Origin: Macrostomum lignano
Taxonomy: Eukaryota
Assembly (NCBI GenBank): GCA_002269645.1
Contig: NIVC01001124.1
Span: 248,001-312,000 of the forward strand
Direction: 5' to 3'
DNA: 64,000 bases
The notes beneath the pieces are model-generated. The model did not search any database, had not been told where the DNA came from, and was given only the letters and a program-made list of their open reading frames with translations. The position numbers and the translations under genes are program-made. Shown piece by piece: positions 23,901-32,900 of this stretch. Within the stretch, counting starts at the first letter, position 1, and each line of letters starts with the position of its first letter.

Positions 23901-26900
23901 CTGGCGCCAATATCGAGACTTGTATCCTTTTCTATATGATAACTTTTAATAAAATTATTGTGGCCAGCTATAAGAGCGTAAGTTTTGTTCTATTATTATT
24001 ATTATTCCCAATCGCAGCCGGCCACTTTGCCTCTCTCACACTGCCAGTCTGTGTCCCGAATGCACTTATTTTTCAAATGGGCCAAATGCTGCAAGAGAGA
24101 GAAAGACGGAATGAGCGAGCGCTGGTTCGGCCGCAGGATGGCGAAATTTCATGGAAGAGCCCCCCCCCCCCCCCCGGTCGAGTGGATGAAGCACCGCGAA
24201 GCCGAAACGGGCCTGTAGATAGGGGGATGAGGATCTGCGCGACCGAGTGCCAATGAAAGAATTTTGCCTTTAGCCTTTTTATTTGTGCGTGCGGAGTGTG
24301 CTGTGTGTGTGTGTGTGTGTGTGTGTGTGTGTGTTTGTGCATTAGGCATTTCTTGGGACAAGCGTGTATAAACTGACCCGTGCTATTAGGACCAAAAATG
24401 TGTTGGGCCAGGCCCAATAAGTGCGTCCCGACACTTCCAAAAATGAATTCTATTGAAATGAAAAAATATTCATTGGAACCGTCTTTCGATTCTCCTTTCA
24501 AAAATCAATGTCATTTTTTCATATTTTTAATCAAACACGGGGAATCTAATGATTTGCAGTGTCCTAAGAAGTTTAAAAAATTATGCGAACTGATGGTCTG
24601 ATCCAACAGAACAATTGGGTCTCAAATCGGAATTCTCGTTTTATTACAATATTTCTTACAATATCAAGAAAGTCTACTACAAGTAACAGATAGAGGTTCT
24701 CCACAGGGCTGCCAATCGACACTTGAAAGGATCCTGACATTTGGCATCGTGTTTACTATAAAATATGAAATAATTTAATAAAGATTTAGAATATTACAAT
24801 CAAGCATACAAACCTTATAGATTTAGTATATTTAGATTTTTGCATAGAAACAGCTAGCATCTAAATTCATTAGCTTCCAATTTCACTTATACACGAAACA
24901 TGGCAAATTAAGGTTACATCCGCCTGTGCCCTCGGCCATTTTAACTGAAATTCTCGTTTTCAGTCAGCTGCATTAATCTATTTGTCATATGTGAATGGGT
25001 ATTAACTGACTCAAGTTAGTGACTGGAGGCCATTAACGTAAAGTGACACTTTGAGTGAGGTAGTTTTCCGGTGGAAATTCTCACAGTCTTATGAAGCGCT
25101 TTTAGAGCAAAGAAATAAAGGGCAAAGAAAAACTTTGCATTTCCCGAGAAAACCAAGGACGAGTATTAAAGGGAAACGTTTAATCTCTAAGGCTTTAAAT
25201 GACTTCCTTATTGGCCTGGGTTTGGGCAGCCATACTATGTAGCAAAATTTTTCCTAGAATTATGATAATTATCGTCTGGTGTACTGAAAAGTACGGAGAT
25301 ACCAAGAAACTTAAGATGACTGCATGGACTGCTAGCACATGTTTGAGTGTCACTGTCACTGTAAAGTCTAAATCGATGACTAGTTGGCCCAAAACTAACT
25401 ACTAGGCCTTCCTGAAAAACAATTCTGCTTATCTTGGATCGTAAAGATAAACCCACGTACAGAGCAGAAGTGTTAAGACAAGCGTGTACAAGACCCAGGC
25501 AATCCCTTACCCAGGCCACGTGTACATTCCTATCGCGGCGGGGGGAAGCGGGGAGGAGAGGCGGGCGCAAGGGAGTCAGGATAAAGTTTACACTGAAGTT
25601 GAGGCCTACAAGAGGAAGAGCCAATTCTAATGGAAAGGTACATGTAGAAGTTCCCTTTGACAAACGGCGTACTGCATATGTTCAAACGAATATAATTCAT
25701 TTACGAGACCTGCACTACACAGACAAAATGTGCCACGTCACAAGAGTTTCCATGCATGACCTGGCATGAAAAGACTTGGCTAGGAACCATTACACATATG
25801 TAAGTAGAATTTAAAATTCTTTTTAAAATTTTATGATTAAATAAAAACTTAACCGGAATTTACATATGTACTTTTCTAAAATTCCAGATACGTTGATATC
25901 GATAAGCTACCGTTTTCTTCTATAACAAACAGATTGGCCTTCATTGTCAAGTAAGTCTTGTCTCGTACTCGTATATGTCGTATTTTTTGTAGGTTGAAAA
26001 AAATAATAAGCAGCCTAGTAATACTCTGAGCTCAGTGAAATATAAGAGAGGCGGGACGATCACCTTATTTATCAATTAATTTACAACAGCCAGTTGAGCA
26101 ATCATAAGTAGGCAAAATTTACACTTCTAGGAAGAACAAATTTTACTAAAAGTTTCAATCAAAACATTTGGGAAAGAAATCTCGCACGACACATCGCCCA
26201 CAGTACTAGAGACTTGGAGAAATACTATGTGAGTTTTCTGGGCAACTAATGTAATATATTACTGTTATAATTCGATAGTCGAATTATTTTTTTACCCAAA
26301 GCAGTGCTATTGCATAACTAAAGAACAGTATAAAAATGACAGCATTCTAGAACGAGAAACAAAGCTTACTGCAAAGGCAAACGCCGAAAGAAAAGCAGGG
26401 CAGAGTCAGCAGCAAAAAAGAAGCTCATCTGAATGGAAAGATGGGCGGTCAGCAAAGAGATAGGATCTCAAAAAATTGCAACTCCTAGTAACTGAAACTC
26501 AATTGCAATAAGTGTTTTGTTCTCTAGGGCATTATTAAAACAAGCAAGCCTGCCTGCAGTCAGCTAGTGAGAAAGTAAGTTGTTGCGGCACTATCGGGAA
26601 AGTGAAAATTGTACTCCATCTGACTCACACAAGCAGCAGCGTTGGGACAAACCTCGAGTATTTTAATTGTACAGTAAAATTTCATTGACAATGAAGCATT
26701 TATTAGAACAGCGACATTTAAATCTGTTTTCAAACAAATCAGACCGATTTCTCATGAGTTATTTTTCTTTTGTGCGCCCACGCACAGGTTCATCCGCATT
26801 CAAACTCGCCGCTGCATCCGTCATTTGGTTCACTTGCTGCTCACAAGCCGCAGCAGCAGCAGCAGCAGCAGCAGCAGCAGCAGCCGCTATCCGTGCAGGC

Positions 26901-29900: not shown

Positions 29901-32900
29901 GCCTATTAATGATTACTAAAGCAAGCCTATCTTAATTGATTTCTTTTCCTCGCAGATTCTGAAGTCAGCAACGCCAGCGACATGCCTAAGAGACAAGAAT
30001 GCGCTTTAACGATCAGCAGCGAGCATTCTGATCTCGCCGCTGCATCCGTCATTTGGTTCACTTGCTGCTCACAAGCCGCAGCAGCAGCAGCAGCAGCAGC
30101 AGCAGCAGCAGCCGCTATCCGTGCAGGCAGTCAGTCTATTTGTGAATTTTCTGGTGGATCTGAAGAAAACCCGTCTGGCACAGGATTAAAGAGAAAGAGA
30201 CGATCTGTTTTGGGTGAGTATTATCTGCTGTAGAAGTATTGTACACCAGAGTACTTGTGTTACCTGGTAGAGCACAATTCAAAAGCAATGCAACAATCTC
30301 AGTGGCATTGTTGGGACACAAGCTACAAACGCAATAATAGTAAACACAGCCCAGCCTAGCTCAAGGCTAGTAATTTGTTGGGCATTTATTGGGACATTGC
30401 AGCCAGGCCTATTTTTTGAACAGCATTTGTTGGGTCGCACTTATTGGGACAATACTGATTCTAATCGCGACTACTTCTGAGTTCTGACTTTTCAAAACAG
30501 ACCCAGCATTAGTTGAACACGTTCTATTAAAGGGTTCCTTTATAGCCTATTAATGATTACTAAAGCAAGCCTATCTTAATTGATTTCTTTTCCTCGCAGC
30601 TTCTGAAGTCAGCAACGCCAGCGACATGCCTAAGAGACAAGAATGCGCTTTAACGATCAGCAGCGAGCATTCTGATCTCGCCGCTGCATCCGTCATTTGG
30701 TTCACTTGCTGCTCACAAGCCGCAGCAGCAGCAGCAGCAGCAGCAGCAGCAGCAGCAGCAGCCGCTATCCGTGCAGGCAGTCAGTCTATTTGTGAATTTT
30801 CTGGTGGATCTGAAGAAAACCCGTCCGGCACAGGATTAAAGAGAAAGAGACGATCTGTTTTGGGTGAGTATTATCTGCTGTAGAAGTATTGTACACCAGA
30901 GTACTTGTGTTACCTGGTAGAGCACAATTCAAAAGCAATGCAACAATCTCAGTGGCATTGTTGGGACACAAGCTACAAACGCAAAGAATAGTAAACACAG
31001 CCCAGCCTAGCTCAAGGCTAGTAATTTGTTGGGCATTTATTGGGACATTGCAGCCAGGCCTATTTTTTGAACAGCATTTGTTGGGTCGCACTTATTGGGA
31101 CAATACTGATTCTAATCGCGACTACTTCTGAGTTCTGACTTTTCAAAACAGACCCAGCATTAGTTGAACACGTTCTATTAAAGGGTTCCTTTATAGCCTA
31201 TTAATGATTACTAAAGCAAGCCTATCTTAATTGATTTCTTTTCCTCGCAGATTCTGAAGTCAGCAACGCCAGCGACATGCCTAAGAGACAAGAATGCGCT
31301 TTAACGATCAGCAGCGAGCATTCTGATCTCGCCGCTGCATCCGTCATTTGGTTCACTTGCTGCTCACAAGCCGCAGCAGCAGCAGCAGCAGCAGCAGCAG
31401 CAGCAGCAGCAGCCGCTATCCGTGCAGGCAGTCAGTCTATTTGTGAATTTTCTGGTGGATCTGAAGAAAACCCGTCCGGCACAGGATTAAAGAGAAAGAG
31501 ACGATCTGTTTTGGGTGAGTATTATCTGCTGTAGAAGTATTGTACACCAGAGTACTTGTGTTACCTGGTAGAGCACAATTCAAAAGCAATGCAACAATCT
31601 CAGTGGCATTGTTGGGACACAAGCTACAAACGCAAAGAATAGTAAACACAGCCCAGCCTAGCTCAAGGCTAGTAATTTGTTGGGCATTTATTGGGACATT
31701 GCAGCCAGGCCTATTTTTTGAACAGCATTTGTTGGGTCGCACTTATTGGGACAATACTGATTCTAATCGCGACTACTTCTGAGTTCTGACTTTTCAAAAC
31801 AGACCCAGCATTAGTTGAACACGTTCTATTAAAGGGTTCCTTTATAGCATATTAATGATTACTAAAGCAAGCCTATCTTAATTGATTTCTTTTCCTCGCA
31901 GATTCTGAAGTCAGCAACGCCAGCGACATGCCTAAGAGACAAGAATGCGCTTTAACGATCAGCAGCGAGCATTCTGATCTCGCCGCTGCATCCGTCATTT
32001 GGTTCACTTGCTGCTCACAAGCCGCTGCAGCAGCAGCAGCAGCAGCAGCAGCAGCAGCAGCAGCAGCCGCTATCCGTGCAGGCAGTCAGTCTATTTGTGA
32101 ATTTTCTGGTGGATCTGAAGAAAACCCGTCCGGCACAGGATTAAAGAGAAAGAGACGATCTGTTTTGGGTGAGTATTATCTGCTGTAGAAGTATTGTACA
32201 CCAGAGTACTTGTGTTACTTGGTAGAGCACAATTCAAAAGCAATGCAACAATCTCAGTGGCATTGTTGGGACACAAGCTACAAACGCAAAGAATAGTAAA
32301 CACAGCCCAGCCTAGCTCAAGGCTAGTAATTTGTTGGGCATTTATTGGGACATTGCAGCCAGGCCTATTTTTTGAACAGCATTTGTTGGGTCGCACTTAT
32401 TGGGACAATACTGATTCTAATCGCGACTACTTCTGAGTTCTGACTTTTCAAAACAGACCCAGCATTAGTTGAACACGTTCTATTAAAGGGTTCCTTTATA
32501 GCCTATTAATGATTACTAAAGCAAGCCTATCTTAATTGATTTCTTTTCCTCGCAGATTCTGAAGTCAGCAACGCCAGCGACATGCCTAAGAGACAAGAAT
32601 GCGCTTTAACGATCAGCAGCGAGCATTCTGATCTCGCCGCTGCATCCGTCATTTGGTTCACTTGCTGCTGCCAAGCTGCAGCAGCAGCAGCAGCCGCTAT
32701 CTGTGCAGCAGTCAGTTAATTCATGAGTTTTCTGGCGGAGCTGGTTATTTTTTAATTTTCTGAATCGAGAAGCCGATTAACTGTTGTGTGCTTCACTGGA
32801 ATATTATTTAGAGGACGCATTTTTTGCAGTCTGTTTCTAATAAAATCCGGTGCAATGACCGCGGTAGAGCTCTAGCATTTGCTTTTTATAGTATTTGTGT

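What the first reader, a model, noticed from the sequence alone, without database searches (positions are those of the whole stretch)
26788..32844. Tandem array of symmetric phase-1 exons that splices in frame into a poly-Ala, Cys-containing, KRKRR-punctuated repeat protein
Seen: each ~650-bp unit is an acceptor (ttgatttcttttcctcgcag), an open exon, a G/gtgagt donor and a 386-388-nt intron. The eight complete exons are 252, 267, 261, 255, 258, 264, 264 and 267 nt, all multiples of 3 and all phase 1-1. The divergent first exon uses a different acceptor (cgcacag) but the same phase. Ala tracts are 14, 12, 17, 15, 13, 14, 16, 16, 17 and 8 residues. The 1-nt indels among internal units fall in the introns. 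The last unit loses the donor and has a 1-nt deletion creating TAA (32717-32719), followed by AATAAA at 32839, as a terminal exon would. Repeat: [39 protein letters not shown](A)[33 protein letters not shown]. Established: RKRR fits the furin R-x-K/R-R site and also a classical NLS. Inference: a nested gene, or the 3' part of a transposon gene, built by exon amplification. It could be a polyprotein releasing 4-Cys peptides with length-polymorphic poly-Ala, or a multi-NLS nuclear protein (about 741 aa from the first ATG).
Basis: partly seen in the sequence, partly recalled or inferred. Interest (0 to 1): 0.8.

Follow-up and report, generated by a model that had tools for sequence, protein, structure and literature searches.

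The report
Spliced tandem repeat inside mobile element
The array is real and its units carry working-looking splice sites, but it is one copy of a multi-copy mobile-element-like repeat of the flatworm Macrostomum lignano sitting in a myosin intron, and its reading frame shows no sign of being kept by selection, so it is more likely a spliced repeat transcript than a new polyprotein gene.

Summary
The tandem array exists as described: one partial first exon, eight complete exon+intron units of 639-655 bp and a degenerate terminal unit with TAA and AATAAA. One detail is wrong and matters. The exon at 28012-28279 is 268 nt, not 267. As the sequence stands, the spliced poly-Ala frame stops in it, giving 86 aa from the first ATG rather than 741.

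The window is Macrostomum lignano contig NIVC01001124.1. The array lies inside a 9.3-kb element (24337-33673) with imperfect 38-bp terminal inverted repeats. This element is inserted in the phase-1 intron 5 of a myosin II heavy-chain gene, on the same strand. The same element, with 6 to at least 18 units, sits at eight or more other sites with unrelated flanks.

Evidence against a maintained protein:
- Exons vary as much as introns.
- Substitutions are nearly all nonsynonymous, and one nonsense change has spread through a whole array.
- 35 of 106 exons are broken.
- There is no conserved start codon, codon usage is not coding-like, and nothing outside the species is related.

Evidence for past coding: a diverged sister subfamily keeps the same frame at 50% identity. 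Best reading: a spliced repeat carried by a mobile element (0.55). A real lineage-restricted gene remains possible (about 0.25).

The parts
24337..33673 (+). Whole dispersed element (9,337 bp): 5' unique part, tandem array, 3' unique part. It has no recognisable transposase, so it would be non-autonomous.
   Evidence: Homology to eight other M. lignano loci starts and stops exactly here, and the flanks are unrelated. No Pfam hit in the non-array ORFs.
24337..24374 (+). Left terminal inverted repeat (GTGCATTAGGCATTTCTTGGGACAAGCGTG...)
   Evidence: Local alignment with the reverse complement of the right end matches 28 of 38 positions at the same offset from both ends; 1 of 500 shuffles reaches the score.
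33637..33673 (-). Right terminal inverted repeat (...CCAATAAGTGCCTCGTGCAC)
   Evidence: the junction is identical in six loci.
24296..24336 (.). (TG)n-TTT microsatellite abutting the left end. A G-TTT-G(TG)n run abuts the right end at 33674-33697.
   Evidence: All five distinct 5' junctions and five distinct 3' junctions have this form. No target-site duplication could be defined.
26788..26985 (+). First, partial 'exon' (198 nt) after the acceptor cgcacag. It is homologous to a unit from position 68 onward.
   Evidence: Four predicted proteins start exactly at this base in frame 0 (VHPHSNS.../VRPHSNS...).
27373..32168 (+). Eight complete exon units separated by 386-387-nt introns. Exons: 27373-27624, 28012-28279 (268 nt, frameshifted), 28667-28927, 29315-29569, 29956-30213, 30600-30863, 31251-31514, 31902-32168.
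28018..28020 (+). AAA run where the other units have AA. This 1-nt insertion breaks the poly-Ala frame.
   Evidence: It could be a homopolymer assembly error, because an otherwise intact HSP70 gene in the window has a comparable 1-nt defect.
32556..32844 (+). Terminal degenerate unit: no donor, stop TAA at 32717-32719, AATAAA at 32839-32844.
   Evidence: The unit is conserved in L001 and L003, but the stop position moves by 1-nt indels.
32915..33055 (+). 38-bp minisatellite (3.7 copies) carrying the element's TTGGGACA motif.
   Evidence: 33 of the 35 TTGGGACA sites in the window lie in the element, all on the + strand; 2.1 are expected by chance.
23858..23921 (+). Host myosin II heavy-chain exon ([21 protein letters not shown]), with donor ACTT|gtatcc in phase 1.
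   Evidence: annotated myosin gene model in L004.
23922..39374 (+). Host intron (15,453 nt, phase 1) that contains the element. The next myosin exon starts at 39375 (..[11 protein letters not shown]).

Best explanation
The array is the internal tandem-repeat block of a multi-copy, non-autonomous, mobile-element-like sequence of Macrostomum lignano. The element is bounded by terminal inverted repeats. This copy landed in intron 5 of a myosin II heavy-chain gene, in the sense orientation.

Each 640-655-bp unit is an exon-plus-intron module, probably derived from a once-coding exon. Unequal crossing-over has multiplied the unit, so copy number differs at every locus, and (GCA)n slippage changes the exon length in steps of 3.

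The modules keep strong splice sites. RNA that runs through the array is therefore spliced unit to unit and ends at the terminal unit's poly(A) signal. That is why transcript-based annotation calls 'hypothetical proteins' here.

The poly-Ala reading frame is currently evolving without detectable constraint, so the RNA is most likely non-coding or yields only incidental peptides.

Shown: the repeat anatomy, the element boundaries and dispersal, the host-gene context, the lack of constraint within the family, and the absence of homologues.
Inferred: mobility by transposition, transcription of this particular copy, and the lack of a functional protein.
For: - Same element, different sites. The window is 100% identical to NIVC01001124.1. 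Eight other contigs carry the same 5' part, array and 3' part, with five different 5' flanks and five different 3' flanks. One copy is antisense inside a TIR-domain gene and one lies next to a cathepsin-like gene.
- Ends. An imperfect 38-bp TIR lies at the exact ends, and an element-specific motif TTGGGACA is strongly enriched. Nothing else in the element has a Pfam match.
- Copy number. Arrays have 6 to at least 18 units. Gene indices in the annotation run up to g39, on at least 15 contigs.
- No constraint within the family. In 104 units there are 20 substitution variants in 222 exon nt and 24 in 387 intron nt (OR 1.5, p=0.2). Among variants seen in two or more units, 8 are nonsynonymous, 1 is nonsense and 1 is synonymous.
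- Damage. TGG->TAG is present in 11 units of L002. 35 of 106 exons are broken, and every locus has at least one.
- Codon usage. The poly-Ala frame scores -0.27 bit/codon, against +0.71+-0.41 for real exons in the window and -0.35 for the unit's own intron.
- ORF length is what chance gives once the (GCA)n tract is kept.
- No family. There is no Pfam family for the unit. An exhaustive HMMER search of 1.84 billion representatives finds only M. lignano self-hits.
- Inconsistent models. Predicted proteins of the family use all three frames and several cryptic internal junctions.
- No conserved start. The upstream in-frame ATG seen in the window is out of frame in the other loci. The SL ends in ATG (PMC8629364), and that AUG reads a 58-aa poly-Gln ORF.
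Against: - A diverged subfamily (P0053/P0028) keeps the homologous frame open over the whole exon and the terminal unit. It is 50% identical, has only in-frame gaps and has the same ...[10 protein letters not shown]|[12 protein letters not shown] junction. That is hard to get by neutral drift and points to coding constraint at least in the past.
- 71 of 106 exons are intact. Most frameshifts are 1-nt changes in short homopolymers in a PacBio-based assembly, so they may be errors. An otherwise intact HSP70 gene in the window has the same kind of defect.
- The number of independent substitutions is small, and young genes can evolve neutrally.
- A target-site duplication could not be defined and no empty site was seen, so transposition, as opposed to another duplication mechanism, is not proven.
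Confidence: 0.55

Rival explanations
1. A genuine, lineage-restricted, multi-copy protein-coding gene built by exon amplification. It would encode a repeat protein with a poly-Ala tract, four Cys and KRKRR per unit. That protein would be either a convertase-processed polyprotein or a multi-NLS nuclear protein. The gene family would be carried around by the element or by segmental duplication.
For: - Consensus splice sites, with a symmetric phase 1-1 in 8 of 9 window exons.
- Transcript-derived GenBank models join units at exactly these junctions (PMC5730564).
- A terminal unit with a stop and AATAAA is conserved across loci.
- The frame is retained between subfamilies A and B at 50% identity.
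- The first AUG of a transcript starting at 26788 is in the poly-Ala frame, at 27399.
- UniProt labels several fragments as 'Secreted protein'.
Against: - No constraint within the family, and a nonsense allele has been amplified in one array.
- Every sampled locus has at least one broken exon.
- No conserved initiator or signal-peptide exon.
- The SL AUG is out of frame.
- Codon usage is non-coding-like.
- No homologue or domain anywhere.
- The UniProt names are automatic calls on fragments that begin inside a unit.
Confidence: 0.25
2. The array acts mainly on its host. Because it is same-strand, phase-matched and has strong splice sites, its exons would be captured by myosin pre-mRNA as poison or terminal exons. 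This would produce truncated or NMD-targeted myosin transcripts, a gene-trap effect. It may add to the best explanation rather than replace it.
For: - The host intron is phase 1, and myosin exon 5 joined to array exon 1 reads straight into the poly-Ala frame (...[16 protein letters not shown]...).
- The array exons are on the host strand and end in a stop plus poly(A) signal.
- The annotated myosin model spans the array.
Against: - A phase match has a 1 in 3 chance.
- Other copies are antisense to, or outside, genes.
- The annotated myosin model skips the array.
- No RNA data were available here.
Confidence: 0.12
3. A non-coding host-gene array whose real products are intronic small RNAs, as in snoRNA host genes, or some other structured RNA.
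For: The architecture (repeated weakly constrained exon plus constant 387-nt intron) resembles tandem snoRNA host loci. This resemblance is recalled knowledge, not a test. Exon and intron are equally conserved.
Against: - No Rfam match in the unit, even at E<=10.
- The intron folds no better than shuffles, with z=-0.26 on the + strand and -1.06 on the - strand.
- No C-box motif on either strand.
Confidence: 0.04

Closest known systems
Tandem-repeat (satellite-like) arrays carried inside non-autonomous DNA transposons
   Same: A TIR-bounded element without a transposase. It has a unique 5' and 3' part around an internal head-to-tail array whose copy number differs between insertions. It is dispersed at many sites, and a short motif is repeated through the element.
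   Different: The repeat unit is long (about 650 bp) and is itself an exon-intron module with consensus splice sites and an open frame. The superfamily is undetermined: no target-site duplication or transposase relative was found.
Genes expanded by tandem duplication of symmetric exons, including multi-peptide precursors with dibasic cleavage sites
   Same: Equal-phase exons, a repeated peptide ending in R-K-R-R, a terminal exon with stop and poly(A) signal, and variable unit number.
   Different: No signal-peptide or initiator exon. No purifying selection on the frame. Nonsense and frameshift variants are amplified within arrays. There are many dispersed copies with identical boundaries.
GenBank 'hypothetical protein BOX15_Mlig029855g…/026960g1/003618g1, partial' and UniProt A0A1I8… fragments of M. 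lignano
   Same: These are the same sequence family. One such model is annotated on this very array, at window 28891-30715.
   Different: Those records are uncharacterised fragments. They do not record the element structure, the dispersal, the host-intron context or the lack of constraint.

Membership tests
Protein-coding gene made of amplified symmetric exons | Consensus acceptor and donor around every unit | tested here: met
   All nine donors and nine internal acceptors are present. Donor GTGAG and acceptor CAG fit the M. lignano consensus (PMC8629364).
Protein-coding gene made of amplified symmetric exons | All exons in the same phase with lengths in multiples of 3, giving one continuous ORF | tested here: not met
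   Exon 28012-28279 is 268 nt, so the spliced ORF stops there. An assembly error cannot be excluded.
Protein-coding gene made of amplified symmetric exons | Purifying selection on the frame (exon more conserved than intron, excess of synonymous changes, damaged copies rare) | tested here: not met
   Exon 20/222 against intron 24/387 variants. Among variants in two or more units, 8 nonsynonymous plus 1 stop against 1 synonymous. 35 of 106 exons are broken.
Protein-coding gene made of amplified symmetric exons | Frame retained between diverged paralogues | tested here: met
   Subfamily B (P0053) is 50% identical, in the same frame, with only in-frame gaps. This is protein level only; no DNA was available.
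Protein-coding gene made of amplified symmetric exons | Conserved start codon or 5' coding exon | tested here: not met
   The upstream ATG in the window is frameshifted relative to the array in L001-L003. The SL AUG reads another frame.
Proprotein-convertase-processed polyprotein or neuropeptide-like precursor | N-terminal signal peptide | tested here: not met
   No 5' exon with Met plus a hydrophobic leader was found. Signal-peptide prediction itself was not run.
Proprotein-convertase-processed polyprotein or neuropeptide-like precursor | Repeated peptides separated by R-x-K/R-R sites | tested here: met
   RKRR is present once per unit. This is a sequence motif only; cleavage was not tested.
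Proprotein-convertase-processed polyprotein or neuropeptide-like precursor | Actual secretion and processing | not testable with these tools
   Needs proteomics or expression experiments.
Non-autonomous TIR DNA transposon | Terminal inverted repeats at the exact ends | tested here: met
   28 of 38 positions match, at the same offset from both ends; 1 of 500 shuffles reaches the score.
Non-autonomous TIR DNA transposon | Multiple copies with identical ends and unrelated flanks | tested here: met
   Five distinct 5' flanks and five distinct 3' flanks.
Non-autonomous TIR DNA transposon | Target-site duplication or an empty site | tested here: inconclusive
   Every junction lies in (TG)n with GTTT on both sides, so no unambiguous duplication can be read. 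No empty site was available.
Non-autonomous TIR DNA transposon | A related autonomous element with a transposase | not tested
   The M. lignano genome could not be searched with the tools at hand.
Intronic snoRNA host-gene array | C/D or H/ACA boxes, or a structured RNA, in each intron | tested here: not met
   No Rfam hit, no fold signal and no C box.

The most novel reading that the evidence does not exclude
A mobile element has picked up and amplified an exon-intron module of a flatworm-specific gene. It now spreads a translated, copy-number-variable repeat protein (poly-Ala, Cys-containing, KRKRR-punctuated; secreted polyprotein or nuclear protein) around the genome. Each insertion would be a ready-made, phase-1, in-frame exon cassette that can also be spliced into host genes such as this myosin.
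Probability: 0.15. Interest if true: 0.6.

Novelty: new member of a known kind. Interest (0 to 1): 0.3.

Why it matters
The result explains a set of at least 39 'hypothetical protein' gene models in the M. lignano annotation. They come from a long-period (about 650 bp) tandem repeat that escapes the usual repeat filters, because Tandem Repeats Finder's default maximum period is 500. These models should be treated with caution.

It also documents a repeat family whose units are complete splice modules. Dropped into introns in the sense orientation, as in this myosin gene, such arrays could trap host transcripts. If the frame is translated after all, this would be a case of a mobile element spreading an exon cassette, which bears on how new repeat proteins arise.

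Tried and rejected
- Pfam on the unit: only sub-threshold noise.
- Pfam on ten ORFs from the non-array parts of the element: nothing.
- Exhaustive protein search: only self-family hits plus one spurious bacterial repeat protein.
- A search with the diverged unit P0028 returned only itself.
- DNA for the diverged subfamily B could not be obtained, so no Ka/Ks between A and B was possible.
- snoRNA or structured-RNA idea: no Rfam hit, no fold signal, no C box.
- I looked for homology between the element's 5' or 3' unique parts and the unit's intron. Only short motif matches turned up.
- I tried to define a target-site duplication. It is ambiguous because every junction sits in (TG)n.
- Literature and supplement searches for the gene identifiers found nothing.
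- The UniProt names of some hits (Dymeclin, UCH, BAF250_C, Rho-GAP, DRIM) looked like evidence for different host genes. I rejected that, because those proteins consist entirely of this repeat.
- My first flank comparison gave no hits because the array flooded the BLAST output. Masking the array fixed it.

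
Full report
**1. What is in the sequence**

The region holds a head-to-tail array with start-to-start spacings of 639-655 bp and about 99% identity between units. Tandem Repeats Finder reported only the (AGC)n tracts, because its longest period here is 500.

- A first partial exon at 26788-26985 (198 nt).
- Eight complete exons of 252, 268, 261, 255, 258, 264, 264 and 267 nt.
- Eight introns of 387, 387, 387, 387, 386, 386, 387 and 387 nt.
- A terminal unit from 32556 that lacks the donor, with TAA at 32717-32719 and AATAAA at 32839-32844.

The one discrepancy is important. Exon 28012-28279 has GAAAGT where the others have GAAGT. Its length is therefore 268 nt, and the concatenated poly-Ala frame runs into a stop 11 codons into that exon. 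From the first ATG (27399) the ORF is 86 aa. It is 741 aa only if the extra A is deleted, and 652 aa if the exon is skipped.

**2. How much of this is beyond chance**

The repeat is real. The open frame is not remarkable. It extends only 16 nt upstream and 17 nt downstream of the splice sites (95-100 codons). When the rest of the unit is shuffled around an intact (GCA)n tract, the longest open frame is 88+-22 codons. The longest frame actually present in the unit is a 101-codon one on the minus strand (P=0.24). All length differences between exons are (GCA)n slippage, so 'multiples of 3' follows once the base unit is 3n.

**3. Organism and context**

The unit peptide hits 30 predicted proteins, all from Macrostomum lignano. 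Locus L004 (GCA_002269645.1, NIVC01001124.1) is 100% identical to the window. The window is therefore NIVC01001124.1:248001-312000 of the Mlig_3_7 assembly.

tblastn with a recalled human MYH9 sequence places myosin II heavy-chain exons on the + strand at these positions:
- 17607-17948
- 19979-20173
- 21124-21222
- 22564-22686
- 23858-23929
- 39311-39688
- 40703-40948
- 41418-42683
- 44530-44691

Pfam confirms Myosin_head for the large exon. The GenBank annotation has a 1785-aa Myosin_head+Myosin_tail_1 model spanning the array.

The array sits in the 15,453-nt intron 23922-39374. That intron is phase 1, and exon 5 joined to array exon 1 reads in frame into the poly-Ala frame.

**4. The array belongs to a dispersed element**

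Loci fetched through annotated family members carry the same array on nine contigs, including the window's own. Every array starts at the same truncated first unit and, where the end is present, ends with the same terminal unit.

Homology to the window runs from 24337 to 33673 and stops there. Flanks are unrelated to each other and to the window, and no myosin is present at the other loci.

Contexts differ:
- Sense in the myosin intron (this window).
- Antisense inside a TIR_2-domain gene (L003).
- Downstream of a cathepsin-like gene (L008).

Full units number 6, 8, 9, at least 7, at least 13, 14-15, at least 15 and at least 18.

The two ends form an imperfect 38-bp inverted repeat at the same offset (28 of 38; 1 of 500 shuffles). 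All junctions have the form (TG)nTTT|GTGCATTAGG... and ...CCTCGTGCAC|GTTTG(TG)n, so a target-site duplication cannot be read.

An 8-mer, TTGGGACA, occurs 35 times in the window, and 33 of those lie in the element. All 33 are on the + strand: three per unit intron, four in the 38-bp minisatellite at 32915-33055, and two in the 5' part. Chance predicts 2.1. The 2.45-kb 5' part and the 0.95-kb 3' part have no Pfam-recognisable ORF.

I therefore read it as a non-autonomous, TIR-bounded mobile element of undetermined superfamily. Transposition itself is inferred.

**5. Is the array transcribed and spliced?**

No RNA data can be queried here. However, the GenBank models (BOX15_Mlig...) come from a genome-guided RNA-seq assembly (StringTie/TACO, TBONE, TransDecoder). 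They were filtered against repeat annotation made with default TRF, which would miss a 650-bp period (PMC5730564).

P0001, P0003, P0006 and P0035 join units exactly at RSVL|A/D-SEVSN. Four UniProt fragments begin exactly at the first base after the 26787 acceptor.

The model annotated on this array (window 28891-30715) has a 7-Ala tract, which no exon here has. It is therefore a transcript projected onto many loci.

Other predicted proteins use the poly-Gln and poly-Ser frames and cryptic internal junctions (IRAG|N/T..., LKKT|H/P...). This shows noisy or artefactual models.

The family index reaches g39, on at least 15 contigs.

**6. Is the poly-Ala frame maintained?**

*Within the family, no.*
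- In 104 aligned units from nine loci there are 20 substitution variants in 222 non-tract exon nt and 24 in 387 intron nt (OR 1.5, p=0.2). Four of the 20 exon variants are alignment artefacts of the extra A.
- Variants seen in at least two units are 8 nonsynonymous, 1 nonsense and 1 synonymous.
- The nonsense change (TGG->TAG) is carried by 11 units of the L002 array, so that array kept expanding or homogenising with a dead frame.
- Of 106 internal exons, 35 are broken, and every locus has at least one.
- Most frameshifts are 1-nt deletions in short homopolymers, some recurrent, such as the C of CCC. Because the assembly is PacBio-based, and an otherwise intact HSP70 gene in the window also lacks one A in an A-run, I give the frameshifts only moderate weight. 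I rest the argument on the substitutions.
- A codon-usage log-odds trained on about 2,000 codons of genes in the window scores the exon at -0.27 bit/codon in the poly-Ala frame. Real 75-codon chunks score +0.71+-0.41, and the unit's own intron scores about -0.35.
- There is no conserved start. The in-frame upstream ATG in the window (ORF 26667-27005) is shifted by a 1-nt indel in L001-L003.
- The 35-nt M. lignano spliced leader ends in ATG (PMC8629364). Joined to 26788, it reads a 58-aa poly-Gln ORF.
- No Pfam family fits. HMMER against 1.84 billion representatives finds only M. lignano self-hits plus one spurious protein.

*Between subfamilies, there is one counter-signal.* UniProt A0A1I8HX90 (P0053) is a three-unit array with a terminal unit from a diverged subfamily B. 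Its unit is [80 protein letters not shown].
- It is 50% identical to the A unit over the whole exon and the terminal unit. It is in the same frame, has only in-frame gaps and has no poly-Ala.
- Retaining an 80-codon frame through that much divergence is unlikely under pure drift. The exon was probably coding at some time, or B is a functional parent.
- Caveats: only copies with open frames enter protein databases; P0028 shows a frame-shifted head in a B-like unit; and no B-type DNA could be fetched.
- The best-conserved blocks are the first about 39 nt and the last about 36 nt of the exon. KRKRR is AAGAGAAAGAGACGA. Conservation could therefore reflect splicing signals as well as peptide function (inference).

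**7. Other ideas tested**

A host-gene array for intronic small RNAs finds no support. There is no Rfam hit, the intron folds no better than shuffles (z=-0.26 and -1.06), and there is no C box. The element's unique parts are not homologous to the unit apart from short motifs.

**8. Verdict**

The interpretation as an in-frame exon-amplified protein gene is only partly supported.

- The most likely reading (about 0.55) is a young array of exon-intron modules inside a multi-copy mobile-element-like sequence. It is transcribed and spliced, but the frame is not under present selection.
- A real lineage-restricted repeat-protein gene family remains possible (about 0.25).

The family is already in GenBank and UniProt as uncharacterised fragments. 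What is new here is the element structure, the dispersal and the constraint analysis.

Interest is modest (0.3). It would rise to about 0.6 if translation were shown.

Noticed in passing
window 14382-16297 (defect near 14966-14972): An otherwise intact, intronless HSP70 gene is split into two ORFs by a missing A in an A-run (ggtgaaagaacattctc where [14 protein letters not shown] needs agaaacatt). It is either a very young pseudogene or a homopolymer error of the assembly.
   Followed up: partly
window 17607 to beyond 52700, + strand: A myosin II heavy-chain gene spans most of the window. Its introns are packed with long micro- and minisatellites. Examples: (TGTC)n 20270-20928, (AGTT)n 22973-23695, (TCTA)n 33950-34371, a 40-mer at 35400-36307, a 27-mer at 38123-39243, a 23-mer at 42921-44458, (GTCT)n 49254-51242 and (AGT)n 52535-53448. 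The annotated model (1785 aa) starts at window 22095 and seems to miss the N-terminal exons at 17607-21222.
   Followed up: partly
window 6048-6119 and 13812-13909: A tRNA gene (58 bits) and a 5S rRNA gene (44.8 bits; gathering score 38) lie upstream of the HSP70 and myosin genes.
   Followed up: no
window 56603-60375: A 3.8-kb array of a 31-bp unit (about 127 copies) that is open for up to 1025 codons on the minus strand. This shows how easily the repeats in this genome give long spurious ORFs.
   Followed up: no
window 8192-9280, + strand: A 362-aa ORF with a poly-Gln stretch and a long coiled-coil-like region. It has no Pfam family above threshold.
   Followed up: no
each unit, minus strand (e.g. 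within 28667-29314): The longest open frame in the repeat unit is a 101-codon frame on the opposite strand, spanning mostly the 'intron'. It is longer than the proposed coding frame.
   Followed up: partly
UniProt A0A1I8HX90 / A0A1I8FV09 (P0053, P0028); not in the window: A diverged sister array (subfamily B) has the same exon boundaries and KRKRRSVL end but no poly-Ala tract. P0028 joins a B-like unit to an A-type unit, so mixed arrays may exist.
   Followed up: partly
L006 and L010 (NIVC01002364.1, NIVC01005200.1): Two contigs share the same 3' flank of the element and have similar unit numbers. They are probably duplicate or homeologous assemblies of one insertion, in keeping with the known redundancy of Mlig_3_7.
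   Followed up: no
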